This document shows, in pieces, positions 1 to 18,400 of a stretch of 64,000 bases of DNA. The stretch is from Macrostomum lignano (lineage: Eukaryota): contig NIVC01001184.1 of assembly GCA_002269645.1 (NCBI GenBank), forward strand, positions 278,540 through 342,539, given 5' to 3'. The notes under the pieces are model-generated. The model was not told the origin of the DNA. It saw only the letters and a list, made by a program, of their open reading frames with translations, and searched no databases. Made by a program: the position numbers and the translations under genes. The number at the start of each line of letters is the position of its first letter. Position 1 is the stretch's first letter.

Positions 1-318
1 AAAATTGTTAGATGCATGATATTTTGCTTTGATATTATGCTTAGGATGTTGAACTTTGTGACTTAGGAGCCAAAAGTATAGTAATTTAATATTAACATTC
101 TTGTAAATATTAAATTAAAGCATTAAGCTTTCTTCAACTTCAATAGGTCTGAGGCTTAAGGGTAAAGTATAGATATTAGTACTTAATTTGATTGTCCATT
201 GTTTATAGTTCCTTAGTGAGGTCCATATTTTTTTCATATAAATTCATGTTACTAAATGCAATCCTCTGGTAAAAAAGTCAAATCTATCAAATTTTAATTT
301 TGTTTGGCATCATTACAG

Positions 319-3300
319 GGCTGCAATTGCCACATTGACAGCCGTGTAGCCTGGCTCAATTGGCCAGAAGCTACCAATGTAGAATTCACAACCGCAGATG
401 AGCTGGACTCAGCTGTTGACGATGCTGACTTGGTTGATGGAGTTCCAACTTTAAGATTTCTCTCTGCTGCAGCACTAACAGAGGACTCAAACTTTCTAAG
501 AAATCGCTGTCTATCATTGAGTCCGCCTAGATCTGTTTGGCCTCAATTAGTTCGCAGTGCCATTAAACAGGGTCACAGTCTCAGCTTGGTTCATCTGGCC
601 ACTGTATGGCCTTTTGATGAGTTCTCAGTACTAGATACTGCGCCACTGTCTTTCACCGCAACAATTGACAGTCTTCAGAAGCCTAGTAGCTGTCGAAATC
701 TTGCCCTGTCAGAAATCTGGTCATTAATCTGCCTGGCTGTGATCAATCGATGCCGAAATAACTCGGCTTCATCCGCAACTGCACCAGCATCGATTCGCTA
801 TCATTTGCCTGGTCAGCCGCCGTCTGCGCAGCAGCAGTTTGCTTTCCTTGATCAGCTAGCAAGTTGCGGCGATGTTAGCAGATCTGTTCAAGTTGATCTT
901 GACGTTGCTGTTGAAGGTCAAAATGAACTGTTGCGCCTAGCGTCTGTTGTATCGCGCTGTTATCGGGGTCAGCTACGCTTGCGACGACTTTGTGTAGCAT
1001 CGGTGCATCCAATGAAACTGTTGAGCGTTGTAAACGAACTTAAAATTGGTAGCTGGAGAAGTATTAATGAAGAGGTGGGTTTTCATAACAGCGTATTCAG
1101 ATTTTGTGAATATAGATTTTAGTATATAGGACTAGCAATCAGCGCCCCCCCCATTGGGGCGGGGAGGCAACATATATAGAAATGAACATTTTTGGGATAA
1201 ACTACATGTAAGTCTTTTAACATGTACTGTTAGTATCCTAAGGAAAACGTGTTAAAAAGCAGAAAAGATCCCCTGTAATCTTTGGAATTTTAAGCCCTGG
1301 CCTAAGCCTAATTCTCCTTCGATCTACCTTTGGCTTGACCAACAACTTTCAATTGAGCCTTGGCATCTATGTCAGCGATTCTCCCCAAGAACAAAAAAAC
1401 ACAAGTTCGAACCAGATAGACGAATTCAGTATCGAATAAAACATGAGTAGCTGATGTGTTTATCAAGTTACCCGATCCTAAAAACCTTACAGGCATATGC
1501 TGTTACCCTAACAAAATTAAACTAAGCTAGAGGGCCCTTACTTTCTTTTCGTTATAAATCGCACACACGACTAGCGTCTATCTTGACATACATGCGCAAC
1601 CTTGGGAATCACTCGGCCGTTTCTATTGGCAACACACGCATGTAAGTCGCTATTGGCTGAGAGCAGTCACGTGACTACTATTCCGTCCAATAGCGACTTA
1701 CATGTGTGTGTTGCCAATAGAAACGGCCGGGTGAATCCCTAGGTTGCGCCCAAGCATGTATCCTGTATTTGCAGCAAAAGTTAATCTATATTTTTCTTCC
1801 CCAGTCGCTACCGATCAGTGTTTGTCTGACAGACACCGATCTGAGCATTGGCAGCCTATCTCAGGTCAATGCTAGTCAACTTTGGCAAAGTCTTCTTGAC
1901 AATGCAACCTGCCTGGACCTGAGCCGTAGTCGCCTTGATCGTCGTTCAGTTATTAGCCTTGGAGCACTGTTAGGCTTGGCCTCAGTTGATCCCAATAATG
2001 CAGCAAATGCAACACCAATGAGCAGCCGTTTGCAGCATCTCAATTTAAGCGGCAATCCTGGCATCCAGCTGCCTTCTTTTGGTTCTATAGTCGGTAATTT
2101 GACTGCTTTGTGCCTTGCCGGCTGCAGATTGCGAGCGAACTCATCAGATCTGTTGGCTGTTATAAACGCTTGTCGTTTGACTTTGCAGCATTTGGATCTG
2201 TCCGATAATCCTTTGCTGCTCCCGGTGGAAATGATTGAAACTTCCGGCGCTTCGTTCTATGGTAAACAGCCTTGTATGAGGGTTTTACACCCCGTGTCCT
2301 TCGTTGGTTGTACACCCCGTATCCTTATATAGTTGTGTGACCCGTGTTCTTAGATAGTAGGGCACACCCCGTGTCCTTAGGTTGTTGTAAACCAGGGTCG
2401 GCAAACTTTTACCGCAAGGGCCAGATAGAGAATCTAGCGCATGACTGCGGGCCAGAGGATTGGAAGAGAGGAGAGAAAAGAGAGATAGGAGAAAGGAGAT
2501 GAGATAATAAAGAAGGAGAGAGGAGACGAGATGAGGGATGAAATCGAAGAGGGGGAAAAGGGAAGAAGAGAGGAGGAAGGGAAGAGGAGAGGAGGGAGAG
2601 GAGAGGAGAAAGGGAAGAGGAGAGGAGGGAGAGGAGAGGAGAAAGGGAAGAGGAGAGGAGGGAGGGAAGAGATTAGGGAGATAAGAGAGAGAAGGGAGCT
2701 GAGAAGAGAGGCAAACCTTGAGCAGGCCAGATTGCTATTGTGAAGTTTCAAAGAACCCGAGAACCGGATAGAGAGGCTTCGCGGGCCATAGTTTGCCGAC
2801 CCCTGTTGTAAACACTATCCTGTGTCCTTCAAGATGTGTCCATAGACCTTAGACAGTGCAGGGCCATTGGTGGACCCGTGTCTTAAAGAGATTCCGTTTC
2901 AAGTGTTACGATCGTGTCCTACTTGAACAATTTTCACTTCTCCAGCAGAACTGTTTCGTCTGCAACGGCTGTCCTCACTACGCCTAGCCTGTCTAACCAG
3001 TCCTGGTGGATTGGACAGGGAAATTGGAGCCAACGGAAGCAACTCTTCAGTAGCTTTACTATTAGACTCTGTGCTAACTGGCTGCCCTAAATTGTGCCGG
3101 TTAGACATTAGCGATTGGCCAGTTGGCACTAGAGATTGGGCCACTAGCTTGCTGCCGATACTACTAACTAGTAGCGATGTGAGTAGGTCGCACTCTCTGA
3201 AATTGCTAGTGCTCAGCTGGCCTAGAGGCTATCAAGCGGACGATTGGTCCGATGGAAGCGGCGAATTTCGTGACGCTGAGGATGGCGAAGATTTCGAAGA

Positions 3301-3394
3301 ATTTCAAGCCGAGCTGGATATTGAAGCCAGGGACTCCTATGCTGCTGGTGTAGATCGTTTGCAGTCTGCTGGCTGCGGTCTTGTTTGGGTCTAA
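319..3394 (+). CDS. Leucine-rich-repeat (RNI-like) protein, 3 exons visible
   Basis: Exons 319-1074, 1775-2261 and 2946-3394 join in frame through GT-AG introns (phase 0, phase 1). LRR motifs include LQHLNLSGN, LQHLDLSDN and LCRLDISDW. An in-frame TAA lies at 295 and there is no early Met, so the start must be spliced on (upstream exon or SL). Confidence 0.7.
1587..1760. mobile_element. Palindromic (fold-back) MITE-like element, copy 1, in LRR intron 1
   Basis: Self-complementary arms (gcgcaacct-ggga-t...cggccgtttctattggcaacacac-catgtaagtcgctattgg) centred on agtcacgtgact. A near-identical reverse-complement copy lies at 8283-8457. Confidence 0.8.
2393..2805. mobile_element. hAT-type MITE with purine-only (GA) core
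   Basis: TIRs cagggtcggcaaact / agtttgccgacccctg, with a perfect 8-bp TSD TTGTAAAC at 2385-2392 and 2806-2813. Related copies near 6340-6462, 20269-21499 and 31904-32240. Confidence 0.85.
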
Positions 3395-3465
3395 TATTTC
3401 CATATTTGTAGGCTCTCTGTGATTTCTAATGTTGTCAATTTGTTTGCGATTAACTATTGAGATTT

Positions 3466-3812
3466 TCAGACCGGAAGTGTCAAAATAGCTAATGAGGCTT
3501 CCAGACCGGAAGTGTCAAATTAGCTAATTAGGCTTCCGGACCGGAAGTGTCAAATTAGCTAATTAGGCTTCCAGACCGGAAGTGTCAAAATAGCTAATTA
3601 GGCTTCCAGACCGGAAGTGTCAAATTAGCTAATTAGGCTTCCAGACCGGAAGTGTCAAATTAGCTAATTAGTCTTCCAGACCGGAAGTGTCAAATTAGCT
3701 AATCAGGCTTCCAGACCGGAAGTGTCAGATTAGCTATTCAATAATTAGGCTTCCAGACCGGAAGTGTCAAATTAGCTAGTTAGGCTTCCAGACCGGAAGT
3801 GTCAAATTAGCT
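3466..3812. repeat. 35-bp minisatellite, about 10 units (ggcttccagaccggaagtgtcaaattagctaatta)
   Basis: Unit read directly from the sequence. Confidence 0.9.
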
Positions 3813-4234
3813 ACCGAGACTATCAGTAGCTTGTTAAAACATAGATTTTCCTGACTATTTTTTTGGCGTGGACCTTGATTGTTGCTAATTGATTCTTGAA
3901 CGACGATTTGCCTTTCAGTTTTAATTGGAAAATACTGTCTCACTGTTTGATCAACGCTTTAAATTGCTTTATTTATGTGCCAATAAATAAATATTCGACT
4001 ATTCATGCCAATGAATAGTATTTATTTAATTAATAAATACATATTTTATTTAAATAAACTTGGTTACTAATTTTAAAAAGTTAGATTTGGCTTACAGCTT
4101 TTTTGAGTTTTATTGGCAGCAATTAATTTCACTAGATCCAAATCTAAAGTCTTAGACTTTACATCGTACGCCTCATCCCAATCCCTTTATTAAACAATTC
4201 ACCCAAATCCCTACCTCAAACCCTTCACCAGATC

Positions 4235-4610
4235 CCTAATTCAACCCTTCGCCCAGATCCGTACTTCAAAACCTTCACCCAGATCCCTACTTCAAAACCT
4301 TCACCCAGATCCCTACTTCAAAACCTTCATCCAGATCCCTACTTCAACCCTTTCACCCAGATCCCTACTTCAACCATTTCACCCAGATCCCTACTTCAAC
4401 ACTTTCACCCAGATCCCTACTTCAACCCTTTCACCCAGATCCCTACTTCAACACTTTCACCCAGATCCCTACTTCAACCCTTTCACCCAGATCCCTACTT
4501 CAAAACCTTCACCCAGATCCCTACTTCAACACTTTCACCCAGATCCCTACTTCAAAACCTTCATCCAGATCCCTACTTCAACCATTTACCCAGATCCCTA
4601 CTTCAACCAA
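4235..4610. repeat. ~26-bp minisatellite (acccagatccctacttcaaaaccttc)
   Basis: Unit read directly; a related, more degenerate array lies at 10890-11540. Confidence 0.85.
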
Positions 4611-5300
4611 AAAAATCCTGCTATGGACCATAGACATCAAATCATTTTTTAAAACTTGTCTTAACGTTCTTAACGTTCTCGGCTTCGCCTCGTTCAATAA
4701 ACAAGTCACTCAAGCATTTATTTCCCTAGCACTGGTTTAAATGGGGAATAATATGTACCTTAGGCAGCGGCTATTATTTCAGCGACTATCGTTTCTAGCT
4801 GTCTCAGCTAGTCAGCGGATGAGACAACACTGACCATAGATGGCCATGGAGGAAAAGTATGAAATCAGTCATTCCCCGTTTAAAAAATAGTAATACGTGT
4901 GTTCCTCACCATCTCAACATACTTTAGCTTAACTATTAACTCTTAACAGAATTCAGCTTGCTCCCCTTAGCAGATTCAAAACTCAGCACCAAAGCATAGG
5001 CCACAGACGAAAAGTCCAAAGTCTATTACAGAGATAGGAAAAACAGGTTTTTGGACATTTTCACCCATTTCTTAAGGTGGCACCCTATTTTTTATTAGCC
5101 TAAAACATATTCTGGAAAATTTCTCGTCTATTAGTCCAAGTCACATCTTTCTACGACTTACCGTTTAAGAGGAAATGCCGCACAAACAAACATACGCCAC
5201 GGTCTCAGAGTGAGTTTTAGTATTAGGAAGATAGATAGATCAGTAGAACATACAGTTTTTTCTTTCCCCTTTTATGCTCTGAATCGTCCATTAACTTAGA

Positions 5301-5582
5301 ATGTCGGCCCAGTCGCCAGCCTCAATGTCGCTAATGGAACAGGAGCTGAATCAGGCTCAGATTCGAGAGATTTTCACCTCGTTCAATCGATCGCATCAGC
5401 GCTGCTTCACCGATTGCGTTAACAAATTCGACAGGCGAAGCGTTAGCGATTCGGAGAAGAATTGCGTAGCAAACTGCGTGGCCAAGTATATGAATACTAC
5501 TCAGAGAATTTCTATGCGATTCCAGGAGCACCAGGCCATGATCACGGGCGGCGGGGCTGTTGCTCAAGGCCAGGGAAAATAG
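5301..5582 (+). CDS. TIMM9: Mitochondrial intermembrane-space small Tim chaperone Tim9
   Basis: 93 aa with twin CX3C motifs (CFTDC, CVANC) and the TQRISMRFQE segment typical of Tim9. A polypyrimidine tract and AG acceptor (5298-5299) lie 1 nt before the ATG. Confidence 0.9.
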   Translation: MSAQSPASMSLMEQELNQAQIREIFTSFNRSHQRCFTDCVNKFDRRSVSDSEKNCVANCVAKYMNTTQRISMRFQEHQAMITGGGAVAQGQGK

Positions 5583-6020
5583 ACTGCTTTGCGAATGTTT
5601 TTATAGTCTGGTTGGCATTTTAAGCATCCTAGTAAAGTACATAATTTAATAATTGTCAACAACTATTGTCTGTTTTGTCCGCAACAAAAAGTGCAATTTT
5701 GTCTTTCTTTCTTTCAGATTCAGATTCAGACTAGTAAAACAGTAGGATAGGATCACTGGAGGTTGGTTTTTTAGTTGCAAATAGATTTGCGAGATATGAA
5801 GTTTTCTGGGTTTTAGCACTGTATCGACAGAATACCATCTTCTGAATTTTTGAATTGCAAATGAAACGAATTGATTAAGGAGTAAATTTTTAACAGGCCT
5901 TAGCAATCCATGGCTCCGGGCCAGATGAGAGAGGAAAGGAGAGGGAACAAAGAGAGAAAAGAGAAGATAAAAGATGACAAGATAAAATTTTTGCACTTAC
6001 TTTCATATACGGCAATCTTT

Positions 6021-6314
6021 TTAGCGGTTGTGAAGTTTCGCGGTTGTGAAAGTAGGTGATTTAGCGGTTGTGAAGTTTCGCGGTTGTGAAAGTAGGTGAT
6101 TTAGCGGTTGTGAAGTTTCGCGGTTGTGAAAGTAGGTGATTTAGCGGTTGTGAAGTTTCGCGGTTGTGAAAGTAGGTGATTTAGCGGTTGTGAAATTTCG
6201 CGTTTGTGAAAGCAATCCGTCTTGCTCAAGGACACAAATTGTTCTTATTAGCATCGGGAATAGAACCCCGTACCTTCAAGTCGTGCGTCCGACGCTCTGA
6301 CCACTAGGCTATTG
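6021..6314 (-). mobile_element. tRNA-derived SINE with tandemly amplified 3' part
   Basis: The minus strand reads A-box-like TAGCCTAGTGG, B-box-like GGTTCTATTCC, then GTGTCCTTGAGCAAGAC (a conserved SINE core-like motif). About 4.5 copies of a 40-bp unit follow (6021-6211). Confidence 0.65.
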
Positions 6315-6807
6315 TAAAAACCCCTTTAGAAGATTGAAAGAGTTGAAAGGAGAGAGGAGGTAAGACAGCTGAAAAGAGACCTTGAGCGGGCCGGATCGCC
6401 ATTGTGAGTTTCAAAGGACCCCAAGACCGGATAGAAGCTTCGCGAGCCGGAGTTTGCCGACCAACTCCTGGACTAGAAAAGGCACACTTGAGCACAAGCA
6501 CAACAAAAATTTCCATCAGAACGTCTTTTGCCTGATTGCTCGCCTCCATGGCTAGAAAAGAATAGTTTGATTAACTTGCGAAAGACACTTTGGTATTTTG
6601 CTCCATATAAAATTCGGAACCTCAGAAGGTGAAGTTTTGTCTGTATTTTGTGGCGATAACCAGCCTCCAGTGAAATTTGAGTGCAGAGTCCTGCTTTGAT
6701 TATCCATGGTCAAAAGTCAGTTGCGTATCTGAGATGAAATTTCATCGACAGCTCCAAAAGTGGAAAAAAAGTCCAACTTTTAAATATTTGTAATATAAAT
6801 TCTTCAG

Positions 6808-7983
6808 GAAAGCCAACCGTCTGCTGTAACAGTGGCAGCAACAGCGCCACAGTGCGTCGCAGCTGAAGCTTCACATTCATCTGAGAGCCAAGTTGAAGTT
6901 AACACACTAGTTGAACTAACAGATTGCAATCTTAACTTAGAAGCAAGCCAGGGTCGAAGTCAGCAAGCTAATAAACAACGATTTAAACAAGCGCGAGCGC
7001 CTCCGCCTGCAAAACAACAAGCTGAGGCATGCCAGTCATTGAATTTCCGTAATCCAGTAACCGCACGTTATCCAAACACGGATCAGTTGTGGCACAGAGT
7101 TGGAGAATTATCCCTATTCGATTGGTCAGTGTCCGGCAACGAGACTTGCATAGTAGTTCGCGGTCGAGGCTTCTGCATCGCTCTAGACGTTGGCGTCTGC
7201 CCGCCGCAGGCTGTGGACGCCGATCACGTGTTTATTAGTCACGGTCACGTTGATCATTGCGGCGCATTGCACATGCATATTAGAAAGCGTCAGTTGCTTA
7301 GACTGCCACCGGCTGTCTACTACATGCCCGAATGTCTAATAAATCCAATGCAATCTACATTGGCTGCATTTGTTACCATGCAAGGTGACAGCGACTATGC
7401 GGAAATGGTGTCCAACTCTAGACTTGTCGGTTTGAAAGTTGGCGATCGAGTTCCAATTAGTAATGACAATAATCAGCCTGCCGATGCAGCCAGTCTGACC
7501 TTGAGCGTATTCGCTACTGATCATCGGGTGCCCAGTTTGGGCTGCATATTGCGCCGTAGACACATCGTTTTGCTGCCTGAATGTCGTCGACTGAGCCAGG
7601 ATGAGCTGCGAGCACGGGTTGCTCAGGGCCTGCCAGTGCGCGGTCCCGAGTGGGAGCCGTTGCTAGGCTACACTGGAGACACCAGATTCAATGTATTCTT
7701 AACGCCGCAAGATCCGGACTTGTTGCGCGTTAGATTGCTCATTTCCGAGTTGACATTTTTGAGTGGTTCGATTGAACGCGCAGATAGTTTTGGACATTGT
7801 CACGTTGATCAATTTGCGCAGCATTGGAGACTGTTTGGCGCTGTGAATCGGCTTGTGTTTGTGCACTTTAGCAATAAGGTTTTGCCGGAAGAGATTCTTG
7901 AGCGGGTGTACTCAACTTTGCCTCAACAGCTGGGTCGCAGAGTCTACTGCGGACTGATTGCCAAGAGATTGCTGTATTCATGA
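6808..7983 (+). CDS. TM-type (plant/Thermotoga-like) short-form tRNase Z, paralog 1
   Basis: Motifs DWSVSGNETC, FISHGHVDHCG (MBL His motif), FATDHRVPS, GYTGDT, SELT, GHCH and HFS. Intronless. The ORF is open from the acceptor at 6806-6807; in-frame TAA at 6796; the first in-frame Met lies after the His motif. Confidence 0.8.
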   Translation, partial: ESQPSAVTVAATAPQCVAAEASHSSESQVEVNTLVELTDCNLNLEASQGRSQQANKQRFKQARAPPPAKQQAEACQSLNFRNPVTARYPNTDQLWHRVGELSLFDWSVSGNETCIVVRGRGFCIALDVGVCPPQAVDADHVFISHGHVDHCGALHMHIRKRQLLRLPPAVYYMPECLINPMQSTLAAFVTMQGDSDYAEMVSNSRLVGLKVGDRVPISNDNNQPADAASLTLSVFATDHRVPSLGCILRRRHIVLLPECRRLSQDELRARVAQGLPVRGPEWEPLLGYTGDTRFNVFLTPQDPDLLRVRLLISELTFLSGSIERADSFGHCHVDQFAQHWRLFGAVNRLVFVHFSNKVLPEEILERVYSTLPQQLGRRVYCGLIAKRLLYS

Positions 7984-8282
7984 GCCATGGACTACAAAAT
8001 GAAAGAGAAACTTTCCAAACAGAGCTTGTTATCCTTAAGTAATTTGCTTGTACACAAGCTTGGTAACTATATGTGCAATAGACAGACTGATATGTACCGA
8101 AACAAATCTGATATAGCTGAATATGAGCAACCATTCTCAACCATCCGATTTATCGTGGCTTTGAGGCAAGCATAGAAATCGAACACCAAAATGGTGTACA
8201 CTTCTTCTCTGAGATAAAAAGACTGTATAGGATTGCTCATCTGCAAAATGGCTGCGGTTAAAAGGGTCCTCAAAAATTGAGA

Positions 8283-8457
8283 ACATGCTTGGGCGCAACC
8301 TAGGGATTCGCCCGGCCGTTTCTATTGGCAAAACACACATGTAAGTCGCTATTGGACGGAATAGTAGTCACGTGACTGCTCTCAGCCAATAGCGACTTAC
8401 ATGTGTGTGTGTTGCCAATAGAAACGGCCGAGTGATTCCCAAGGTTGCGCATGTATG
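8283..8457. mobile_element. Palindromic MITE-like element, copy 2
   Basis: Reverse complement of 1587-1760 with few differences. Confidence 0.8.
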
Positions 8458-8777
8458 AATTTGAGAAACTACTCGTATATTGGTTGCTGAAGTTTTTAAA
8501 ATACTTCTACCAGTGAATATTATTGGTTGATGCAGGGAAATCCGCTGCTCACGAATTTAATCTCTCATTCAACTGAGAAAAGTAAACTCGGTCGTTTAAG
8601 ACACAGACAAGTAACTTTATAGCCTCGCAGATAATCTTCACGACCATAGGCAACTTTTGGGAGGACTCCAGGCTTTGCCATGCTTCAAGGCTTCAAGATT
8701 AAGTATTGAAAACAGCACGAAACAAACAATGAAACTTAGTCTATGTTAGAAAGCTCCCTGGACTAATACTTTACATA

Positions 8778-9350
8778 CGAGGGTCATCCCAAAAGTTCTC
8801 TGTGTCACTGAATTGCTCCTACGAACTGGCACCAATTTTGAAGAAACTGCACACAAACTTGCACCAATATCTGCACACAACATTGATGAATTTTCATAAA
8901 AAAATCTCCATGCAATTAGAAATAACAAGCTGAGTTGTCCAACACCTTCAGAGCAAATGGACAGCTCTCACATTGACTTCTTTAACTGGCACAGTGCAGC
9001 TCGTGCAGCATCACCGACCAGTCATGCGAGTCAGCCAGTCATTCAAGAATAAATGATGGAATTCTTGTCAAGTTCATTCACTTTTCTGCTTGTGACACTT
9101 GCCTATTCAGTCGGTGATGCTGCACGAGCTGCACTGTGCCAGTTAAAGAAGTCAATGTGAGAGCTGTCCATTTGCTCTGAAGGTGTTGGACAACTCAGCT
9201 TGTTATTTCTAATTGCATGGAGATTTTTTTATGAAAATTCATCAATGTTGTGTGCAGATATTGGTGCAAGTTTGTGTGCAGTTTCTTCAAAATTGGTGCC
9301 AGTTCGTAGGAGTGGTTCAGTGATACAGAGAACTTTTGGGATGACCCTCG
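8778..9350. mobile_element. Tc1/mariner-type MITE with ~240-bp TIRs
   Basis: TA|cgagggtcatcccaaaagttctctgt ... acagagaacttttgggatgaccctcg|TA. The arms (about 8778-9018 and 9110-9350) are nearly perfectly complementary, with a TA TSD. Confidence 0.85.
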
Positions 9351-9962
9351 TATGGTGGGAATAATTAATACTATTTATTAACTTAAAATATGAAAGGAAA
9401 TGTCCCAAATTTTGAGGATTTTCGACCACAGAGACATTTCGTGGACCGAGCAGTCCATCACGTTTCGTTATCTATGCCAGGCTAATTTTGCTCAGTCTGG
9501 TTTGGATTTAATTAATTGCTGTATGGACTGCTTGGGGTTGGTTGCCTTTTAACTGAAAAATTTATGGTTGTATATGAGTGTGTTCTTAGACGAATAAGAC
9601 GAAGACGAATAATAAAACAATGCCATGCATTTCAGCGTATTGGCTCTTGTATTTCTTTTGTTTTTGTTTACGTATTTTAGTTCTTACTAGGTATTTTACT
9701 TGTAGTAAAAAATCTTTTGTGTATAGTACTGACTCAGTAGCTAGTGTGGTTCGCTTAATATAAAAACTCCCTTAGAATAACAAAATAGCTTCTACCTAGG
9801 AATTCCGTGTGACAGTGACAGTAGCTCAAAAAGATATTCTTAGAGATATTTTTGAATCCTGAATTTCGCACAGCAATTCTGATGCTTAGAAAAACCAGTA
9901 GCTCAAAAAGACACTCACGCTACATATCGGCTGGTTTCCCATGATTTTTGTCCCTATTCCAG

Positions 9963-10835
9963 TGTCTGTCAGTGCCCGATCCCCTCCTGCCCCTGCCGGC
10001 ATGGATGGCTGGCCTGTTTGCCCTGCTAATCGCTGTTGGCTTTGTGCTCAGCCTGTACCTGTGGGAGCTCGGCTCGGCCAATGCTCGAGCTGGGGTTGAT
10101 CGCGACAATCCTAAAGTGATTATTCGCAGGTTTCTCGGCGTCTCAGCGGTTAGTTTAAGCGTGCTGATCTGCTATAGGTACTTTCTGATGAAGCCGACAG
10201 CTGCCAGCTGGTCAGATGTGCTTCAGCTGATCGGTCTGAGATGGTCCGGAATGCTGCCAGCTGTTGGAGCATCCTTGTTGCTAACCGCTATCCTGTTCAC
10301 TGGCCCGATTCTGCTAGCCTGGGAGACTGGCGACGGATTCTTTGATAGGGAACCGCTGCTGAGTTTGAGATGCTGCCGCACTTTAGTGTTGGCTCCGGTC
10401 ACTGAAGAGCTGTGCTTTCGCGCCCTGATGCTGCCGGTGCTGTGCGTTCATCTCTCTTGCACTCGGGCGGCCTTCCTGTCGCCGCTGTTCTTCGGCTTGG
10501 CGCATTTTCATCATTTGATTAACCGGCTACAGCGCGGCTATCCGCTTGTGCCCAGCCTGATTCAGGCAACGTTTCAATTCTCCTACACTTACATATTCGG
10601 CGTGTATTCGGCCTACTTGTATTTGAGAACTGGCCAGTTAGCTGCCGCCTGCGCCGCGCATTCCTTCTGCAATCTGATGGGTTTCCCAGATTTTGAGGCG
10701 CTGGCCAATCTGCGAGGAATTAAACTGGCGGTGCACGGCGGCGCCTTTGTTTTGGGATTGGTTGGTTGGCTGGCCCTGCTGGGGCGGCTGACCGAACCAG
10801 CGATGTTTGCTTCGCAGTGCGACTGCTTCTGGTAG
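9963..10835 (+). CDS. RCE1: CAAX prenyl protease 2 (Rce1)
   Basis: Multi-TM protein with APVTEELCFR, FFGLAHFHH and HSFCNLMGFP motifs. Intronless. The frame starts at the acceptor 9961-9962; first genomic Met at 10005. Confidence 0.9.
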   Translation, partial: CLSVPDPLLPLPAWMAGLFALLIAVGFVLSLYLWELGSANARAGVDRDNPKVIIRRFLGVSAVSLSVLICYRYFLMKPTAASWSDVLQLIGLRWSGMLPAVGASLLLTAILFTGPILLAWETGDGFFDREPLLSLRCCRTLVLAPVTEELCFRALMLPVLCVHLSCTRAAFLSPLFFGLAHFHHLINRLQRGYPLVPSLIQATFQFSYTYIFGVYSAYLYLRTGQLAAACAAHSFCNLMGFPDFEALANLRGIKLAVHGGAFVLGLVGWLALLGRLTEPAMFASQCDCFW

Positions 10836-10889
10836 CGAGTTGTTTGATCCATCTATTAACTGTTGTTGCGAGTTTAATTGCTTTTTATA

Positions 10890-11540
10890 TACATCTAACC
10901 CTTCGAAAATCCCTGCAATAAACCCCTCACACAGATCCCTACATCAAACCCTTCACAAATCCCTACATTAAGCCCTTCACACAGATCCCTACATCAAACC
11001 CTTCACAAATCCCTACATTAAGCCCTTCACACATATCCCTGCACCAAACCCTTCACAGAGATACCTACATTAAACCATTCACAGATCCCTACATTAAACC
11101 CCTCACACAGATTCCTACATCTAACCCTTCACACAGATCCCTACATCTAACCCTTCACATGAATCCTACGTCTAACCCTTCACATAGTTCCCTACATCTA
11201 ACCACACTGATCCCTACACCTAACCTTCACACAGTTTCCTACATCTAACCTTCACACAGTTTCCTACACCTAACCTTCACACAGTTTCCTACATCTAACC
11301 TTCACACAGTTTCCTACATCTAACCCTTCATATGGATCATACGTCTAATCCTTCACACAGATCCCTATATCTATATAACCCTTCACACAGTTCCCTTCAT
11401 CTAACCCTTCACTTGGATCTTACATCTAACCCTCCACACAGATCCCTGCATATAACCCTTCACACATCCCTAAATCTAATTCTTTACACAGATTCCTACA
11501 TTAAACCCTTCACACATTCCTACATTATTCTTACCCTTCA
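10890..11540. repeat. Degenerate ~26-bp minisatellite (cacagatccctacatcaaaccctt)
   Basis: Read directly; same family as 4235-4610. Confidence 0.75.
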
Positions 11541-12154
11541 CAAGAGGTCCCTGCACAAAACCAGTCAGCCAGTTTAAGCCTAAAATCCCCAACTTCAATA
11601 AAATATTTGTGAATCTTCATTTTTGCGTCCTAAAAATGGTGTGGCTTTACTTGTTAGTACTTTTCAAATATCAGTTTGTTAGTTGTTTCTGCAAGAACAT
11701 TTGCACTCTTCTATCAGCTAAGGTTTATGTTTACTCTTGTAAGTTTTGTTACATTGTTTGTACATGTACGTTAAGCATTGAGAGTTTTCTACTCAACGAA
11801 TCAGTCAATCAATCGATATTTATTCAAATTTGCTGAAAAAGTTAAACTGAATTTAATCTGTTGGCAGTCACTTTTCCTGATTTTTAATTCATACTTTTGT
11901 AAGTTTTTATTTTCAATTTCTCATTTATGCGACTTTGGTTATTATTCCTAACAGTGTGGCAAAGAGATTACTTTTTTCAATAAATGTATTACGGACGGCA
12001 TTACTGGCTACTTTCCTACTTGACAAGCTGGTTTAACTTACTTAATTATATTTAGTTTTACCAGACTTATTCTTATTTTCCTGATTGCGCCAGGCGCTTA
12101 AACCATTGTTGTAGGAATGTAAAGGTAGTTATTTGTTTATTAGATTTTAAGGCC

Positions 12155-13010
12155 GTTGCAGTAATCAGGGATTGTAGCGGGGTTGCAGTGTTGCAGTAAT
12201 CAGGGATTGTGTCGGGGTTGCAGTGTTGCAGTAATCAGAGATTGTGGCGGGGTTGCAGTGTTGCAGTAATCAGGGATTGTGTCGGGGTTGCAGTGTTGCA
12301 GTAATCAGGGATTGTAGCGGGGTTGCAGTGTTGAAGTAATCAGGGATTGTGTCGGGGTTGCAGTGTTGCAGTAATCAGGGATTGTGTCAGGGTTGCAGTG
12401 TTGCAGTAATCAGGGATTGTGTCGGGGTTGGAGTGTTGCAATAATCAGGGATTGTGTCGGGGTTGCAGTGTTGCAGTAATCAAGGATTGTGTCGGGGTTG
12501 CAGTGTTGCAGTAATCAGGGATTGTGTCGGGGTTGCAGTGTTGCAGTAATCAGGGATTGTGTTGGGGTTGCAGTGTTGCAGTAATCAGGGATTGTAGCGG
12601 GGTTGCAGTGTTGCAGTAATCAGGGATTGTGTCGGGGTTGCAGTGTTGCAGTAATCAGGGATTGTGTCGGGGTTGCAGTGTTGCAGTAATCAGGGATTGT
12701 GTTGGGGTTGCAGTGTTGCAGTAATCAGGGATTGTAGCGGGGTTGCAGTGTTGCAGTAATCAGGGATTGTAGCGGGGTTGCAGTGTTGCAGTATTCAGGG
12801 ATAGTGTCGGGGTTGCAGTGTTGCAGTAATCAGGGATAGTGTCGGGGTTGCAGTGTTGCAGTAATCAGGGATTGTGTCGGGGTTGCAGTGTTGCAGTAAT
12901 CAGGGATTGTGTCGGGGTTGCAGTGTTGCAGTAATCAGGGATTGTAGCGGGGTTGCAGTGTTGCAGTAATCAGGGATTGTGTCGGGGTTGCAGTGTTGCA
13001 GTAATCAGGG
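12155..13010. repeat. 35-bp minisatellite, ~24 units (gttgcagtaatcagggattgtgtcggggttgcagt)
   Basis: Read directly. Confidence 0.9.
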
Positions 13011-13188
13011 CAATTAATACACGTGCCGTTAATGGTATTTAGCTCATTGCATTATAATATATGAACTGAGTGTTTTAAAAAGAAGAAAATTCGTTGGAAT
13101 TCATGTACCATTGCGTAAGAATAAAGGCAGAAAATACAAAAACAGGTTTTGGCTGTCCTGAGCAGCTAGTTCAAGCCGAGGTGACACA

Positions 13189-14217
13189 ATGTCCCATAAT
13201 GACGAAGGTGCAGAGACCGCCAAAGCGGCCAGTTGGGTCGAGTTTTTCGCCGACCAACCGCAGAACAAGATGCGAGTGTTCGACTGGTCAGTGTCCGGCT
13301 TTGAGACTTGCATAGTAGTCCACGGTCCCAGCTTCCGTCTGGCGCTGGACATTGGCGCCTGTCCGCCGCAGGCAATCAGCGCCGATCACGTGTTCATTAG
13401 TCACGGTCACGTGGACCATTGCGGAGCACTGCACCAGCACATGCGCCGGCGTCAACTGGTAGGCCTACCACCAGCTACGTACTACGTGCCGGAGCATCTG
13501 GTCCAGCCGCTGATTGACATTGCTCGGCTATTCAGCGTCGTACATGGCGACGAAGACGAGGACAACGAAGGAGGTTCTGCGAAACTGTCGACGAAAGATA
13601 AAAAATCCAAGAAAGAGGATGCCACTGTCGCAGACGGTGCCTCAGCCGAAGCTGGGAGTGACGAAATAAGAATCTACGGCAAAATTGTAGCCGCTAGTCC
13701 GGGTGACGATTTGCAACTGTCAAAGAATCTTCGCATCCGTCCGTTCGCCACAGATCATCGAGTACCCAGCATTGGCTGTCTGGTGTACTGCAAGCGCAGC
13801 CAGTTGCTACCCAAATATGCCGGCCTGCCGGGTGCGGAACTTGCCGAACTGGCTCGCAACGGGGAACAGTTACGAGAGGCTCGGTGGGAACCCGCTATCG
13901 GCTACACAGGGGATACCAGATTCACTGTTCTAGCGTGTCCTCCCGAGCCCGACCTGCTCAAGGTTAGACTGTTAGTCTGCGAGCTAACCTACGTTGAAGG
14001 GCCGACAGATACAGCTGAGAAATACGGTCATTGTCATTTGCACGATTTCTCGTCGCGTGCAAATCTGTTTGACAATGTTGGCCAGCTGTTGTTTGTGCAC
14101 TTCAGTAGGCGGCACTCGCCTAACCAAGTGATTAACGCTGTGCTGACTTCGCTGCCAGAGGAGCTACGGTCTAAAGTCTACTGCGGACTCAATGCTCTGC
14201 GGTTCTATCGTTCCTGA
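13189..14217 (+). CDS. TM-type short-form tRNase Z, paralog 2
   Basis: 342 aa with DWSVSGFETC, FISHGHVDHCG, TM-type arm LLPKYAGLPGAELAEL, GYTGDT, CELT, GHCH and HFSRRH. Clearly paralogous to 6808-7983. Confidence 0.85.
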   Translation: MSHNDEGAETAKAASWVEFFADQPQNKMRVFDWSVSGFETCIVVHGPSFRLALDIGACPPQAISADHVFISHGHVDHCGALHQHMRRRQLVGLPPATYYVPEHLVQPLIDIARLFSVVHGDEDEDNEGGSAKLSTKDKKSKKEDATVADGASAEAGSDEIRIYGKIVAASPGDDLQLSKNLRIRPFATDHRVPSIGCLVYCKRSQLLPKYAGLPGAELAELARNGEQLREARWEPAIGYTGDTRFTVLACPPEPDLLKVRLLVCELTYVEGPTDTAEKYGHCHLHDFSSRANLFDNVGQLLFVHFSRRHSPNQVINAVLTSLPEELRSKVYCGLNALRFYRS

Positions 14218-14448
14218 TGATACTGACTTATTTTACTATTCTATCTTACACTAAATAAAGTTTATACTGATGCTTTGCCATTGTTTTCTCAGACAGTTTT
14301 TTTAATAAAAAGTTTTAAACATCGTGTCTTTAATTAATTTAACTTTCTATTTTACAAAATAAACTGTAAAAATTTCAGCTAGAATTTCACTGCCGTAACT
14401 ACAAAACTGAGCTGATTTCGATTCGGAGCTGCACTCCAAACATTAATT

Positions 14449-15174
14449 ATGACTGCTGAGGTTAAACATGCTGCGGGGCTGGACAGCCGGCAGCCTGCTA
14501 TGAAAGAGGTGGGTTTGGCACTTTCTGTAGGAGTGGCCTGTTGTGTGCCTTGTCTGTCTGCCCTGTCCTATTCTGTCTGTGTGTTCTGTCTGCCCTGTCC
14601 TGTTCTGTCTGCGTGTTCTGCCTGTCCTATTCTGTCTGTCTGTTCTGTCTGCCCTGTCCTGTTCTGTCTGTGTGTTCTGCCTGTCCTGTTCTGTCTGTGT
14701 GTTCTGTCTGTCCTGTCCTGTTCTGTCTGTCTGTTCTGTCTGCCCTGTCCTGTTCTGTCTGTGTGTTCTGTCTGCCCTGTCCTGTTCTGTCTGCGTGTTC
14801 TGCCTGTCCTATTCTGTCTGTCTGTTCTGTCTGCCCTGTCCTGTTCTGTCTGTGTGTTCTGCCTGTCCTGTTCTGTCTGTGTGTTCTGTCTGTCCTGTCC
14901 TGTTCTGTCTGTCTGTTCTGTCTGCCCTGTCCTGTTCTGTCTGTCTGTTCTGTCTGTCCTGTCCTGTTCTGTCTGTGTGTTCTGCCTGTCCTGTTCTGTC
15001 TGTGTGTTCTGTCTGCCCTGTCCTGTTCTGTCTGTGTGTTCTGTCTGCCCTGTCCTGTTCTGTCTGTGTGTTCTGTCTGCCCTGTCCTGTTCTGTCTGTG
15101 TTCTGTCTGTCCTGTCCTGTTCTGTCTGTCTCTTCTGTCTGTGTGTTCTGCCTGTCCTGTTCTGTCTGTCCTGT

Positions 15175-15207
<33 letters not shown>

Positions 15208-15269
15208 GTCTGTTCTGTCTGCCCGGTTCTGTTCTGTTTGTCTGTCTGTCTGTCTCTCTGTCTGTCTGG

Positions 15270-15323
<54 letters not shown>

Positions 15324-15326
15324 GGT

Positions 15327-15423
<97 letters not shown>

Positions 15424-15454
15424 GGTTGTTTGTCTGTCTGTCTGTCTGTCTGTG

Positions 15455-15487
<33 letters not shown>

Positions 15488-18400
15488 GGTTGTCTGTCTG
15501 TCCTGCAGACCTGTATGATCCACCTTACTACTCCATTTGCATTCCATCCCAGCTGCAATTCGCTGTCAACATGACCTGTCAATCATGCGCCGACTCGGTC
15601 AGTCGAGTTCTATCCAGTCACCAGCCGGCAAGCGACTTCGCGGACATCCGAATTCAACTGACTGAACAGCGGGTCATCCTGCGCACTTCGCTGCACGTTG
15701 ACTCGGTGCTGGAGCTGCTGGAGACCACCGGCTGTCGGGCTTTGCTGCAAGGCGTTGGCACAGCCAGCCAGGGCATGCGGGGTCAGGACTTCGCATCTGG
15801 CGTCGTACAATTGGAATCAGTTTATACTACTAATACTAGTAGTGTCCAGGGAGTAGTTCGAATTTTGCAGCCAGATGATCAGCAGTGCCTGTTCGATGGC
15901 ACAGTGGACGGTCTGGAGCCCGGCAGTTGGTACAGCCTCGAGGTCCGTCAGGGCGGTGATCTGTCTGGGGGGTCTGACACATGCGGCCCGGTGTATAATG
16001 ACGGCTCTGATGATGCACAGGTGCGTTCTGTGTTATATATCCCTGTTTTTGTCTGTCTGCATCTTGGGGTGTACGCTCTCTCACCTTACAGCATTCGCTC
16101 TCTCACCTTACAGCATCCGCTCTCTCACCTTACAGCATTCGCTCTCTCACCTTACAGCATCCGCTCTCTCATAAGTTAAGGCATCCGCTCTCATCTTACA
16201 GCATCCGCTCTGTCTCCTTACAGCATCCGCTCTGTCACCTTACAGCATCCGCTCCCTCATCAGTTACAGCATCCTCTCTCTTAGCTTACAGCATCCGCTC
16301 CCTCATCAGTTACAGCATCCTCTCTCTTAGATTACAGCATCCGCTCCCTCATCAGTTACAGCATCCTCTCTTTTAGCTTACAGCATCCGCTCTCTCACCT
16401 TACAGCATCCGCTCTCTCACCTTACAGCATCCGCTCCCTCATCAGTTACAGCATCCGCTCCCTCATCAGTTACAGCATCCGCTCCCTCATCAGTTACAGC
16501 ATCCGCTCCCTCATCAGTTACAGCATCTGCTTCCTCATCGGTTAGAGCATCCGCCCCTTACTGTACTAGTATCTTTCAGCATCTGTCTCGTTTTGCGAAC
16601 TCAAAAATATCTGATAGAGTTATTTCTTTAGACAGGTTTAGCTGTAAATGTTTTCAGACTGCCAAAAAGACATACAATATACCAGTACATAGAAACATAC
16701 AAAAAATCAACTAACAACAGCGTCTCCATGGCAACTCAAATGCCTACGGCCTGACCAGCGTACTGGCGGACGAGTTGACCTGCCCGCGGCCTCATCTAGT
16801 CCCAGTCGCCTCAGGTTTCCTATCCAACGATTTGCGACCGCTAAGCGGCTTGCAAAAGTTTCTGGCCGCTAATTTTCCCGCCCCAGACTTGCGGCATCTG
16901 AAGCGGGCCGCCCGGCCGCCTCCGCGCCTGACTGCAGTCGCCGATTTCGCGTTCTCCTTTGCCACGCCGCCGACTTACCTAATTTGGAATGTTCTGAAGA
17001 ATTTTCAACGATTTGGAGACCTAAATTAGATAGCGTAGAAATTGTTATGGCGCCGGGTAGTGCGCCGCGTACCAGGCAACAATGGGAGCTCACTTCCGGT
17101 TATTGGCCCTGCTCGTTTCATGCTGACAAGTCTATCGAATCGGAGCTGTCGTTGGATTGCTTTACTAAAGCTGAAGGTGTCGCTTGTCTGAGGCATATGC
17201 TGCGCTCGCTGGCTCTCGGTCGAACTTCCGGTTCCACGTCTGCCGATACTTCCGGTCTGAAACCCGCTTCCGGTTTCACGTCTGCCGATACTTCCGGTTT
17301 GAAACCCGCATCCACTTCCGGTTCCACGTCTGCTGATACTTTCGGCCTGAAACCCGCTTCCATTTCCGGAGCCGCGTCTACCGATACTTCCGGTCTGAAA
17401 CCCGGTTCCACGTCTGCTGATACTTCCGGTCTGAAACCCGGTTCCACGTCTGCTGATACTTCCGGTCTGAAACCCGGTTCCACGTCTGCTGATACTTCCG
17501 GTCTGAAACCCGGTTCCACGTCTGCTGATACTTCCTGTCTGAAACCCGCTTCCACTTCCGGTCCTGCATCCGCTTCATCTTCTTCTGCATTCGCCGCTCT
17601 GCGCCTCCCAGTCCCCCAATCGGCCTGCCTAATCGTGGACCCTCGCAACGACACGGTGCTGGTGGAATGCCAAGACGAGCGCCACCTCTGCCCGACCTGG
17701 CACGCCACCCTCCGGGCCGTCCAACAGCTGGGCGGCCGAGGCGACTACCTGTGCACCGGCCTGGACGCTTACGTCACCGACGAGCCGTGCCACATGTGCG
17801 CTATGGCGCTGCTGCACTCCCGGGTGGCTCGGGTTTTCTACTGCCGACCGAGGCCGCGCGGCGCCCTCGGCAGCATCGCCAAACTGCACTGCCATCCGCG
17901 ATTGAATCATCGGTTCCGCGTGTACCGACTTTTCCCTCTGAGTGCGGCTCGAACTGGGGAGAGTTGACGGTTGGATTGCGATTCTTGCTTGCTCTTTAAC
18001 CTGGCCCTTTGTCAGCCACCGTTGTCCTTCAGTTGGTGTAGCAACCTTTCAGTTGGTGTAGCAACCTTTCAGTTGGTGTAGCAACCTTTCAGTTGGTGTA
18101 CCTACCCTTCAATTGGTGTAGCTACCCTTCAGTTGGTGTAGCTACCCTTCAGTTGGTGTAGCTACCCTTCAGTTGGTGTAGCAACCCTTTAGTTGGTGTA
18201 GCAACCCTTCAGTTGGTGTAGCTACCCTTCAGTTGGTGTAGCTACCCTTCAGTTGGTGTACCTACCCTTCAGTTGGTGTAGCAACCTTTCAGTTGGTGTA
18301 GCTACCTTTCAGTTGGTGTAGCAACCCTTCAGTTGGTGTAGCAACCCTTCAGTTGGTGTAGCTACCCTTCAGTTGGTGTACCTACCCTTCAGTTGGTGTA

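What the first reader, a model, noticed from the sequence alone, without database searches (positions are those of the whole stretch)
319..16775. Genes with no start codon of their own: frames begin exactly at 3' splice acceptors (candidate spliced-leader-donated AUG)
Seen: four + strand ORFs start in frame at the first base after a putative AG acceptor, with an in-frame stop just upstream. LRR: cag|GGC at 319, TAA at 295. RNase Z-1: ttcttcag|GAA at 6808, TAA at 6796. RCE1: ttccag|TGT at 9963, TGA at 9942. ADAT3: caacag|CGT at 16721, TAA at 16712. RNase Z-1 has no in-frame Met until after its catalytic His motif, and ADAT3 has none in its N-terminal domain. The FH acceptor (47405) is also in frame. 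Established: flatworm spliced leaders end in AUG, which can serve as the initiator Met. Inference: these genes have outsourced initiation to the SL and cannot be translated without trans-splicing.
Basis: partly seen in the sequence, partly recalled or inferred. Interest (0 to 1): 0.8.

Follow-up and report, generated by a model that had tools for sequence, protein, structure and literature searches.

The report
Flatworm genes using spliced-leader start codon
In this Macrostomum lignano flatworm segment, several genes begin right after a splice acceptor with no usable start codon, so they most likely take their AUG from the trans-spliced leader RNA, a mechanism already described in flatworms.

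Summary
The window is Macrostomum lignano (Mlig_3_7 contig NIVC01001184.1). Its 35-nt spliced leader (SL) ends in ATG. All four + strand sites are as described: an AG, an open frame from the next base, and an in-frame stop 9-24 nt upstream. GenBank annotates LRR, RNase Z-1 and RCE1 as 5'-partial CDSs. These start 3-24 nt after exactly these AGs in every annotated copy, and none has an upstream exon. RNase Z-1 has its HGHVDH motif before its first in-frame ATG. ADAT3 has its conserved N-terminal motifs before its first in-frame ATG.

Corrections:
- RCE1 has its own in-frame ATG at codon 15.
- FH lies on the minus strand and has its own ATG at codon 2.
- ADAT3 in this copy has a 1-nt deletion (16911-16913) that breaks the frame. 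Two other copies are intact.
- ADAT3 is nested in a CCS intron, and its acceptor would also be in frame with the CCS donor.

No SL-junction reads could be examined, so the trans-splice sites and SL-AUG initiation remain inferred. [quoted passage not shown] These are therefore new examples of a known mechanism.

The parts
313..318 (+). LRR trans-splice acceptor candidate TTACAG (fits [T/C]TNCAG). An in-frame TAA lies at 295-297.
319..3394 (+). LRR gene. Exons are 319(328)-1074, 1805-2261 and 2949-3394. It is GenBank PAA71138.1 'Mlig026845g1, partial', and the annotated CDS starts at 328. The first in-frame ATG is codon 232 (1012).
6802..6807 (+). RNase Z-1 acceptor candidate CTTCAG. An in-frame TAA lies at 6796-6798.
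6808..7983 (+). Single-exon ORF for the RNase Z-like metallo-beta-lactamase-fold protein (391 codons). The annotated partial CDS starts at 6817. HGHVDH is at 7240-7257 and the first in-frame ATG is at 7273.
9957..9962 (+). RCE1 acceptor candidate TTCCAG. An in-frame TGA lies at 9942-9944.
9963..10835 (+). RCE1 (CAAX prenyl protease 2) single-exon ORF. Its own in-frame ATG is at 10005. An out-of-frame ATG at 10001 has G at -3 and G at +4. Other copies are annotated 'Mlig025095g4, partial', starting 3 nt after the AG.
16715..16720 (+). ADAT3 acceptor CAACAG. It does not fit the motif and has an A-rich upstream tract. An in-frame TAA lies at 16712-16714.
16721..17967 (+). ADAT3-like gene: N-domain, a 36-nt in-frame minisatellite, then the CMP/dCMP deaminase domain. 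The frame is broken in this copy by a 1-nt deletion at 16911-16913. The first ATG in the deaminase frame is at 17047 (codon 110 of the intact copies).
14449..20010 (+). CCS (copper chaperone for SOD) host gene, 275 aa. Exons are 14449-14508, 15553-16020 (donor CAG|gtgcgt, phase 0) and 19711-20010. ADAT3 lies in its last intron.
46812..47405 (-). First coding exon of class I fumarate hydratase. The acceptor is attacag|ACA ATG. An SL AUG would be in frame, but the gene has its own ATG at 47402-47400.
5301..5582 (+). Tim10-like gene with its own ATG (Mlig025095g2). It serves as an in-cluster contrast.
13189..14217 (+). RNase Z-2, a paralogue 43% identical to RNase Z-1, with its own ATG (Mlig003964g5/g1). 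It serves as an in-cluster contrast.

Best explanation
The region is a same-strand cluster of seven genes in Macrostomum lignano: LRR, Tim10, RNase Z-1, RCE1, RNase Z-2, and CCS with ADAT3 nested inside it. The genes appear to be transcribed as long precursor units and resolved into mRNAs by spliced-leader trans-splicing.

At 319, 6808, 9963 and 16721 the 35-nt leader, which ends ...UUGCAUG, would be joined to the first base of the reading frame. The mature mRNA would then read AUG|GGC..., AUG|GAA..., AUG|UGU... and AUG|CGU.... The SL AUG, at nt 33-35 from the cap, would be the first AUG a scanning ribosome meets, and it is in frame.

- RNase Z-1 and LRR: this is the only AUG that can yield the full protein.
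- ADAT3 (intact copies): it is the only AUG that includes the conserved N-domain.
- RCE1: it adds 15 residues (the SL Met plus 14) ahead of an available internal AUG.
- FH: it adds two residues ahead of the gene's own AUG.
The stop codon just upstream of each acceptor means the unprocessed precursor cannot feed these frames.

Shown here: the host identity, the sequence anatomy, the 5'-partial annotation at these exact sites, and conserved residues lying upstream of the first ATG.
Inferred: SL addition at exactly these AGs, and initiation at the SL AUG.
For: - Host and SL. UniRef M. lignano models contain the window's 16721 peptide at 100% identity. The window's proteins are GenBank BOX15_Mlig entries on NIVC01001184.1. 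The SL sequence and the acceptor motif come from PMC8629364.
- Annotation. The CDSs are 5'-partial and begin 3-24 nt after these AGs in all annotated copies: three for LRR and RNase Z-1, two for RCE1. Consecutive genes share transcriptional-unit prefixes (Mlig021034 g1-g3, Mlig025095 g2-g4). Gene boundaries were derived from SL and poly(A) reads.
- Conserved residues ahead of the first ATG. In RNase Z-1, invariant G110, E112, D127, G129 and H145-H150 precede Met156. In ADAT3, invariant V14, L15, D17, P53, L57, H59, K61 and R62 precede Met110. Homologues have only 9-40 residues before that first motif, against 13 here.
- No alternative 5' exon. No ATG-bearing phase-0 mini-exon with a GT[AG]AG donor exists between the upstream gene and the acceptor for RNase Z-1, RCE1 or ADAT3.
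- Composition. GC rises from 0.26-0.39 to 0.48-0.62 exactly at each acceptor.
- Precedent. In S. mansoni more than 40 cDNAs need the SL AUG. In E. granulosus 143 of 187 SL clusters are full length only with the SL ATG. The Macrostomum SL 'final ATG (translation start codon)' is noted in PMC10468722.
Against: - No SL-containing read, cDNA or peptide was available. The protein collection holds no transcript-derived 'M+ESQ...' form.
- The annotated CDS starts are 3-24 nt downstream of the AGs and differ between copies, so they do not pinpoint the junction. One LRR copy starts right after a different AG (window-equivalent 342), where an SL AUG would be out of frame.
- LRR has no homologues outside M. 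lignano, so its N-terminus cannot be checked. Three chance mini-exon candidates lie in the 5 kb upstream of it.
- The ADAT3 acceptor is a poor match to the motif and ADAT3 is not annotated in GenBank.
- RCE1 and FH have their own in-frame ATGs.
Confidence: 0.7

Rival explanations
1. Each acceptor is an ordinary cis-splice acceptor. A short upstream exon carrying the real ATG was missed by the annotation and by me.
For: Any internal exon looks like this: an AG, an open frame, and stops in the intron. The annotated 5' ends are imprecise, 3-24 nt off and variable between copies. LRR is the first gene of its unit, with 10 kb of unannotated DNA upstream and three possible GT[AG]AG mini-exons there. 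Parasitic flatworms often share acceptors between cis- and trans-splicing.
Against: RNA-seq-based models in all annotated copies (three for LRR and RNase Z-1, two for RCE1) lack any upstream exon and are flagged partial. No consensus-donor, phase-0 ATG mini-exon exists upstream of RNase Z-1, RCE1 or ADAT3. RNase Z-1 and RCE1 are internal genes (g3, g4) of multi-gene units.
Confidence: 0.12
2. ADAT3 is not SL-initiated. One option is cis-splicing from CCS exon 2 (donor at 16020, phase 0), giving a CCS-ADAT3 fusion that starts at the CCS ATG 14449. The other is translation from its internal Met (17047) as an N-truncated protein.
For: The donor CAG|gtgcgt at 16020 and the acceptor at 16721 are both phase 0, so the join is in frame. 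Several automated UniRef models make exactly this fusion (...DDAQ|RLHGNSN). The acceptor lacks the trans-splice motif and a pyrimidine tract. GenBank annotates no separate ADAT3.
Against: Being in frame has a 1-in-3 chance. The annotated 275-aa CCS skips ADAT3. A fusion would place a truncated SOD-like domain on ADAT3. Starting at Met110 would delete the N-domain motifs conserved with other eukaryotic ADAT3 proteins.
Confidence: 0.25
3. RCE1 is translated from its own ATG at 10005. The SL AUG, if present, is bypassed by leaky scanning, so RCE1 does not depend on the SL.
For: An in-frame ATG at codon 15 sits immediately before a hydrophobic stretch that I read as the first transmembrane helix. 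A UniRef model starts there. The SL AUG would have a weak context (U at -3, U at +4).
Against: An out-of-frame ATG at 10001 has G at -3 and G at +4 and lies 4 nt before the in-frame one. It would capture ribosomes that skip the SL AUG. GenBank models keep the frame open to within 3 nt of the acceptor.
Confidence: 0.35
4. The ATG-less frames belong to decaying gene copies or to assembly or annotation artefacts of a polyploid, repeat-rich PacBio assembly.
For: The window's ADAT3 copy carries a frame-breaking 1-nt homopolymer difference. The genome holds three near-identical copies of the region.
Against: The LRR, RNase Z-1 and RCE1 frames are intact in every copy examined, and catalytic residues are conserved. 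ADAT3 is intact in two of three copies.
Confidence: 0.05

Closest known systems
Schistosoma SL-AUG-initiated mRNAs (Cheng, Cohen, Ndegwa & Davis 2006, J Biol Chem 281:733; as summarised in PMC9851317 and PMC3510090)
   Same: The flatworm SL ends in AUG. The acceptor is in phase with the main ORF. A subset of mRNAs has no other AUG able to give the conserved N-terminus.
   Different: There the junctions came from SL-bearing cDNAs, and the SL AUG was reported able to act as initiator in vivo (as cited in PMC3510090). Here the junctions and the initiation are inferred from genome sequence and annotation in a free-living macrostomid.
Echinococcus granulosus SL-bearing transcripts (PMC3510090)
   Same: 143 of 187 SL clusters are full length only if the SL ATG is the start. 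Some have another ATG within a few codons (like FH, and less closely RCE1). Others strictly need the SL ATG (like RNase Z-1).
   Different: That was an EST-based survey with no genomic operon context.
M. lignano SL trans-splicing and operons (PMC5730564, PMC8629364)
   Same: Same organism and same SL. The acceptor motif is [T/C]TNCAG. Multi-gene transcriptional units are cut at SL sites, and the intergenic spacers are repeat-rich.
   Different: In the passages I searched, those papers do not analyse use of the SL ATG as initiator. The spacers here (1.2-2.4 kb raw) exceed their 1-kb repeat-adjusted operon threshold unless repeats are subtracted, which I did not compute.
slORFs in nematodes, Oikopleura and trypanosomes (slORFfinder, PMC9851317)
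   Same: The SL supplies the start codon for an ORF in the recipient mRNA.
   Different: Those mostly use near-cognate NUG codons inside the SL and were found by ribosome profiling.

Membership tests
SL-AUG-initiated trans-spliced flatworm mRNA | The host has an SL RNA whose leader ends in AUG immediately before the GU donor. | tested here: met
   The host was identified as M. lignano. The published SL ends ...TTGCATG and is followed by GTAAG. The SL gene itself is not in the window.
SL-AUG-initiated trans-spliced flatworm mRNA | The SL is joined to the mRNA at the proposed AG (SL-bearing reads or cDNA). | not testable with these tools
   Only indirect evidence is available. The 5'-partial GenBank CDSs start 3-24 nt after these AGs in all annotated copies. 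Three of the four acceptors fit the motif.
SL-AUG-initiated trans-spliced flatworm mRNA | The acceptor is in phase 0 with the main ORF, with no stop between the junction and conserved sequence. | tested here: met
   Met at 319, 6808, 9963 and 47405(-). Met at 16721 in the two intact copies. In the window copy a 1-nt deletion breaks the frame 190 nt downstream.
SL-AUG-initiated trans-spliced flatworm mRNA | No in-frame AUG of the gene's own lies upstream of residues needed for function (strict dependence). | tested here: inconclusive
   Met for RNase Z-1 (HGHVDH lies before Met156) and for ADAT3 (N-domain motifs lie before Met110). For LRR the first Met is codon 232, but there are no homologues to judge by. 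Not met for RCE1 (ATG at codon 15) or FH (ATG at codon 2).
SL-AUG-initiated trans-spliced flatworm mRNA | Translation starts at the SL AUG (N-terminal peptide, Ribo-seq or reporter). | not testable with these tools
   No such data are reachable with these tools.
SL-resolved polycistronic unit (operon) of M. lignano | Adjacent same-strand genes are co-transcribed, and the downstream genes are SL trans-spliced. | tested here: inconclusive
   Seven + strand genes lie in 20 kb. Locus tags share unit prefixes with consecutive g numbers, which I read as gene order within a unit following. CCS starts 232 nt after the RNase Z-2 stop. The other spacers are 1.2-2.4 kb and filled with tandem repeats. I did not compute repeat-adjusted distances.

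The most novel reading that the evidence does not exclude
ADAT3 is generally regarded as an essential subunit of the tRNA A34 deaminase (background knowledge, not tested here). It may have neither a promoter nor a start codon of its own. It sits inside the last intron of the copper-chaperone gene CCS, and it could be expressed only when the CCS pre-mRNA is trans-spliced at 16721 instead of cis-spliced across it. In that case one precursor molecule would yield either a CCS mRNA or an ADAT3 mRNA, with the SL supplying both the cap and the AUG.
Probability: 0.3. Interest if true: 0.5.

Novelty: new member of a known kind. Interest (0 to 1): 0.3.

Why it matters
There are three practical consequences.
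- Annotation: these M. lignano CDSs are deposited as 'partial' although they are probably complete once the SL's ATG is added. Other models fuse or truncate them (the CCS-ADAT3 fusions, and RCE1 started at Met15).
- Transgenes: a construct built from such a gene needs either an acceptor kept in phase with the SL or an added ATG.
- Biology: the cases extend SL-AUG dependence from parasitic flatworms to an early-branching free-living one. That is consistent with the terminal AUG being an old functional feature of flatworm SLs.

The mechanism itself is not new.

Tried and rejected
- I looked for transcript-derived proteins beginning M+ESQ..., M+GCN... and so on. The 90%-identity clusters hold only GenBank partial and UniRef genomic models, so no direct junction evidence exists there.
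- I searched supplementary files of two M. lignano papers for the gene IDs and found nothing.
- I compared the three assembly copies upstream of RNase Z-1 to look for a hidden conserved exon. The copies are more than 99% identical throughout, so this is uninformative.
- I searched for homologues of the LRR N-terminal exon across 1.84 billion representatives and in the PDB. There were no informative hits outside M. lignano, so no N-terminus test is possible. A resemblance to LRRC14/PRAME that I recalled from memory could not be tested and is not used.
- I tried to explain the 3-24 nt offsets of the annotated CDS starts as alternative AG acceptors. This works for only one LRR copy (an AG at window-equivalent 340-341), so the offsets remain unexplained.
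- I looked for an SL RNA gene, Rfam families and tRNAs in the window and found none.
- I do not claim enrichment of in-frame acceptors. The sites were selected because they are in frame, and the other cluster genes (Tim10, RNase Z-2, CCS) have their own ATGs.


Full report
**Identity of the window**

The RNase Z-like ORF at 6808-7983 is 100% identical to a GenBank protein of Macrostomum lignano, 'BOX15_Mlig...g3, partial'. The encoding contig is NIVC01001184.1 of assembly GCA_002269645.1 (Mlig_3_7). Window position p corresponds to record position 278539+p. Two further near-identical copies of the region exist, on NIVC01000206.1 and NIVC01001119.1. That fits the known partial genome duplication of the sequenced line.

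The M. lignano spliced leader is CGGTCTCTTACTGCGAAGACTCAATTTATTGCATG. It ends in ATG and is followed by GTAAG in the SL RNA gene. The top motif enriched at trans-splice acceptors is [T/C]TNCAG (PMC8629364). The SL gene is not in the window.

**Check of the observation**

All four + strand sites are as stated.

| Gene | Acceptor and first codon | In-frame stop upstream | First in-frame ATG |
|---|---|---|---|
| LRR | cattacag\|GGC at 319 | TAA 295 | codon 232 |
| RNase Z-1 | ttcttcag\|GAA at 6808 | TAA 6796 | 7273 (codon 156) |
| RCE1 | tattccag\|TGT at 9963 | TGA 9942 | 10005 (codon 15) |
| ADAT3 | aacaacag\|CGT at 16721 | TAA 16712 | none before the ORF ends at 17029 (this copy) |

Three of the four acceptors fit the published motif. 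The ADAT3 site does not, and its upstream tract is A-rich rather than pyrimidine-rich. GC content rises from 0.26-0.39 to 0.48-0.62 exactly at each acceptor.

The window contains 380 motif sites on both strands. Only five combine an ORF of at least 190 codons from the first base with an in-frame stop within 24 nt upstream. They are 319, 6808, 9963, the FH site, and one site that I read as an internal exon of a minus-strand receptor gene.

Three corrections are needed.
- RCE1 has its own in-frame ATG at 10005, and a UniRef model starts there.
- The 'FH acceptor' is on the minus strand (attacag|ACA ATG CAA). The gene has its own ATG one codon after the junction.
- In this window the ADAT3 frame that opens at 16721 stops at 17029. 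A C-run at 16911-16913 has three Cs here and four in both other copies. In those copies one ORF of 375 or 477 codons runs from the acceptor through the deaminase domain, with its first in-frame ATG at codon 110, equivalent to window 17047.

**Are these the first exons of the mRNAs?**

This question decides the matter, because any internal exon also starts after an AG with an open frame.

The Mlig_3_7 annotation was built from RNA-seq. Transcriptional units were cut into genes at positions marked by SL-containing reads and poly(A) reads (PMC5730564). GenBank annotates the three genes as follows.
- LRR: PAA71138.1, PAA88015.1 and PAA72032.1.
- RNase Z-1: PAA88017.1, PAA72034.1 and the window's own copy.
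- RCE1: PAA88018.1 and one more copy.

All are labelled 'partial'. None has an upstream exon.

The neighbouring Tim10, RNase Z-2 and CCS genes are annotated complete, each with its own ATG. Consecutive genes share unit prefixes: Mlig021034 g1 LRR, g2 Tim10, g3 RNase Z-1; and Mlig025095 g2 Tim10, g3 RNase Z-1, g4 RCE1. Following the naming example in the paper's supplement, I read these as several genes cut out of one precursor.

I could not explain why the annotated starts are a few nucleotides off and vary between copies. One LRR copy starts right after a different AG (window-equivalent 340-341), where an SL AUG would be out of frame.

**Is an AUG from outside needed?**

- **RNase Z-1.** An alignment with its paralogue and with cestode, snail and oomycete homologues puts invariant G110, E112, D127, G129 and the HGHVDH metal-binding motif (H145-H150, window 7240-7257) before the first in-frame Met at 156. 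A start at that Met would give a dead enzyme.
- **ADAT3 (intact copies).** Invariant V14, L15, D17, P53, L57, H59, K61 and R62 (the VLADE and HLKR motifs of the N-domain) precede Met110. Homologues have only 9-40 residues before the first motif, against 13 here, so there is little room for a missing coding exon.
- **LRR.** The first in-frame Met is codon 232 of 552. The N-terminal exon has no detectable homologue outside M. lignano, so this case rests on the annotation alone.
- **RCE1.** The in-frame ATG at 10005 sits immediately before a hydrophobic stretch that I read as the first transmembrane helix. An out-of-frame ATG at 10001 has G at -3 and G at +4 and lies 4 nt ahead of it. It would take most ribosomes that skipped an SL AUG. 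Use of the SL AUG is therefore plausible but not required.

I also looked for a hidden first exon that starts with ATG, ends in phase 0 and has the consensus GT[AG]AG donor. None exists between the upstream gene and the acceptor for RNase Z-1 (1.2 kb), RCE1 (2.0 kb) or ADAT3 (0.7 kb). Three chance candidates exist in the 5 kb upstream of LRR.

**ADAT3 and CCS**

The 275-aa CCS gene has exons at 14449-14508, 15553-16020 and 19711-20010. ADAT3 (16721-17967) lies wholly inside the last CCS intron on the same strand. GenBank does not annotate it.

The CCS donor at 16020 and the ADAT3 acceptor are both phase 0, so a cis-splice would be in frame. Automated UniRef models make that fusion...DDAQ|RLHGNSN. 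This is a real rival for ADAT3. A recent survey of parasitic flatworms reports frequent sharing of acceptors between cis- and trans-splicing.

**Most likely mechanism**

A long precursor covering several genes is processed by SL trans-splicing. At phase-0 acceptors the leader's terminal AUG becomes codon 1. The predicted N-termini are M-GCNCHIDSR (LRR), M-ESQPSAVTV (RNase Z-1), M-CLSVPDPLL (RCE1) and [10 protein letters not shown] (ADAT3). In the chimeric mRNAs the SL AUG is the first AUG. The first recipient base gives +4 G for LRR and RNase Z-1, the two strictly dependent genes. The stop codons 9-24 nt upstream of each acceptor keep the unprocessed precursor from feeding these frames.

The anatomy, the annotation and the conservation are shown here. 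SL addition at these exact bases and initiation at the SL AUG are inferred.

**Comparison with what is known**

The mechanism is established.
- In S. mansoni the SL AUG is in frame in 28% of trans-spliced transcripts, and more than 40 cDNAs need it (Cheng et al. 2006, as summarised in PMC9851317).
- In E. granulosus 143 of 187 SL-bearing clusters are full length only with the SL ATG. Some have a nearby second ATG and some strictly need the SL ATG (PMC3510090).
- All reported parasitic-flatworm SLs end in ATG (PMC12582326).

These four genes are therefore new, unvalidated examples of a known kind. In the papers I could search I found no analysis of SL-AUG dependence gene by gene in M. lignano.

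**Verdict**

Support is strong for RNase Z-1, good for LRR and moderate for ADAT3. For RCE1 the SL AUG is not required, and for FH it is redundant. Interest is low to moderate.

Noticed in passing
window 16911-16913: The ADAT3 copy in this window has CCC where both other assembly copies have CCCC. This shifts the frame so the N-domain ORF stops at 17029. The same shifted reading (…[17 protein letters not shown]) appears in UniRef models that may come from an earlier assembly (source not checked). It may therefore be a real allele or decaying copy rather than a homopolymer error.
   Followed up: partly
window 14449-20010 (ADAT3 at 16721-17967 inside the intron 16021-19710): ADAT3 is nested on the same strand in the last intron of the copper-chaperone gene CCS. 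GenBank does not annotate it as a separate gene in any copy. Older automated models fuse RNase Z-2, CCS, ADAT3 and a downstream ASC channel into one protein.
   Followed up: partly
window 16074-16554 and 18026-19475: Two tandem arrays flank ADAT3 inside the CCS intron. One has 22-nt units containing CCTTACAG. The other has 72 copies of a 20-nt unit containing CCTTCAG. Every unit in both carries the trans-splice acceptor motif [T/C]TNCAG on the coding strand.
   Followed up: no
window 17224-17555: An in-frame 36/48-nt minisatellite (…[12 protein letters not shown]… repeats) sits between the ADAT3 N-domain and the deaminase domain. Its copy number differs among the three assembly copies, giving ORFs of 375, 415 (after correcting the frameshift) and 477 codons.
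   Followed up: partly
window 328, 6817; L002 696, 12914; L003 2506, 10001: The GenBank 5'-partial CDS starts lie 3, 9, 12 or 24 nt downstream of the AG acceptors and differ between near-identical copies. I found no rule that explains these offsets.
   Followed up: partly
window 6808-7983 and 13189-14217: Two RNase Z-like paralogues, only 43% identical, lie 5 kb apart in the same cluster. One has its own ATG (MSHNDEG…). The other has a non-conserved N-terminal extension about 75 residues longer than its paralogue's and no ATG.
   Followed up: partly
window 10001-10007: Two overlapping ATGs (ATGGATG). The out-of-frame one at 10001 has the stronger context and opens a 33-codon ORF. It lies 4 nt ahead of RCE1's in-frame ATG.
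   Followed up: partly
window 14373-14449: CCS starts 232 nt after the RNase Z-2 stop. A candidate acceptor TTTCAG| at 14373-14378 would put an SL AUG out of frame. That would open a 27-codon ORF ending just past the CCS ATG.
   Followed up: no
window ~6250-6315, minus strand: A tRNA-like fragment (…GGGGTTCTATTCCC… on the reverse complement) lies in the Tim10 to RNase Z-1 spacer, next to a 40-nt tandem array at 6020-6212 that is expanded by about 430 nt in one copy. ARAGORN calls no tRNA here. It may be a tRNA-derived SINE.
   Followed up: no
window 36217-37239 and 57510-61250: There is a Tc1/mariner-type transposase ORF (HTH plus DDE_3). There is also a 1246-codon ORF with an Endonuclease VII domain in a 27-30% GC block (about 57-63 kb), which differs in composition from the rest of the window.
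   Followed up: no
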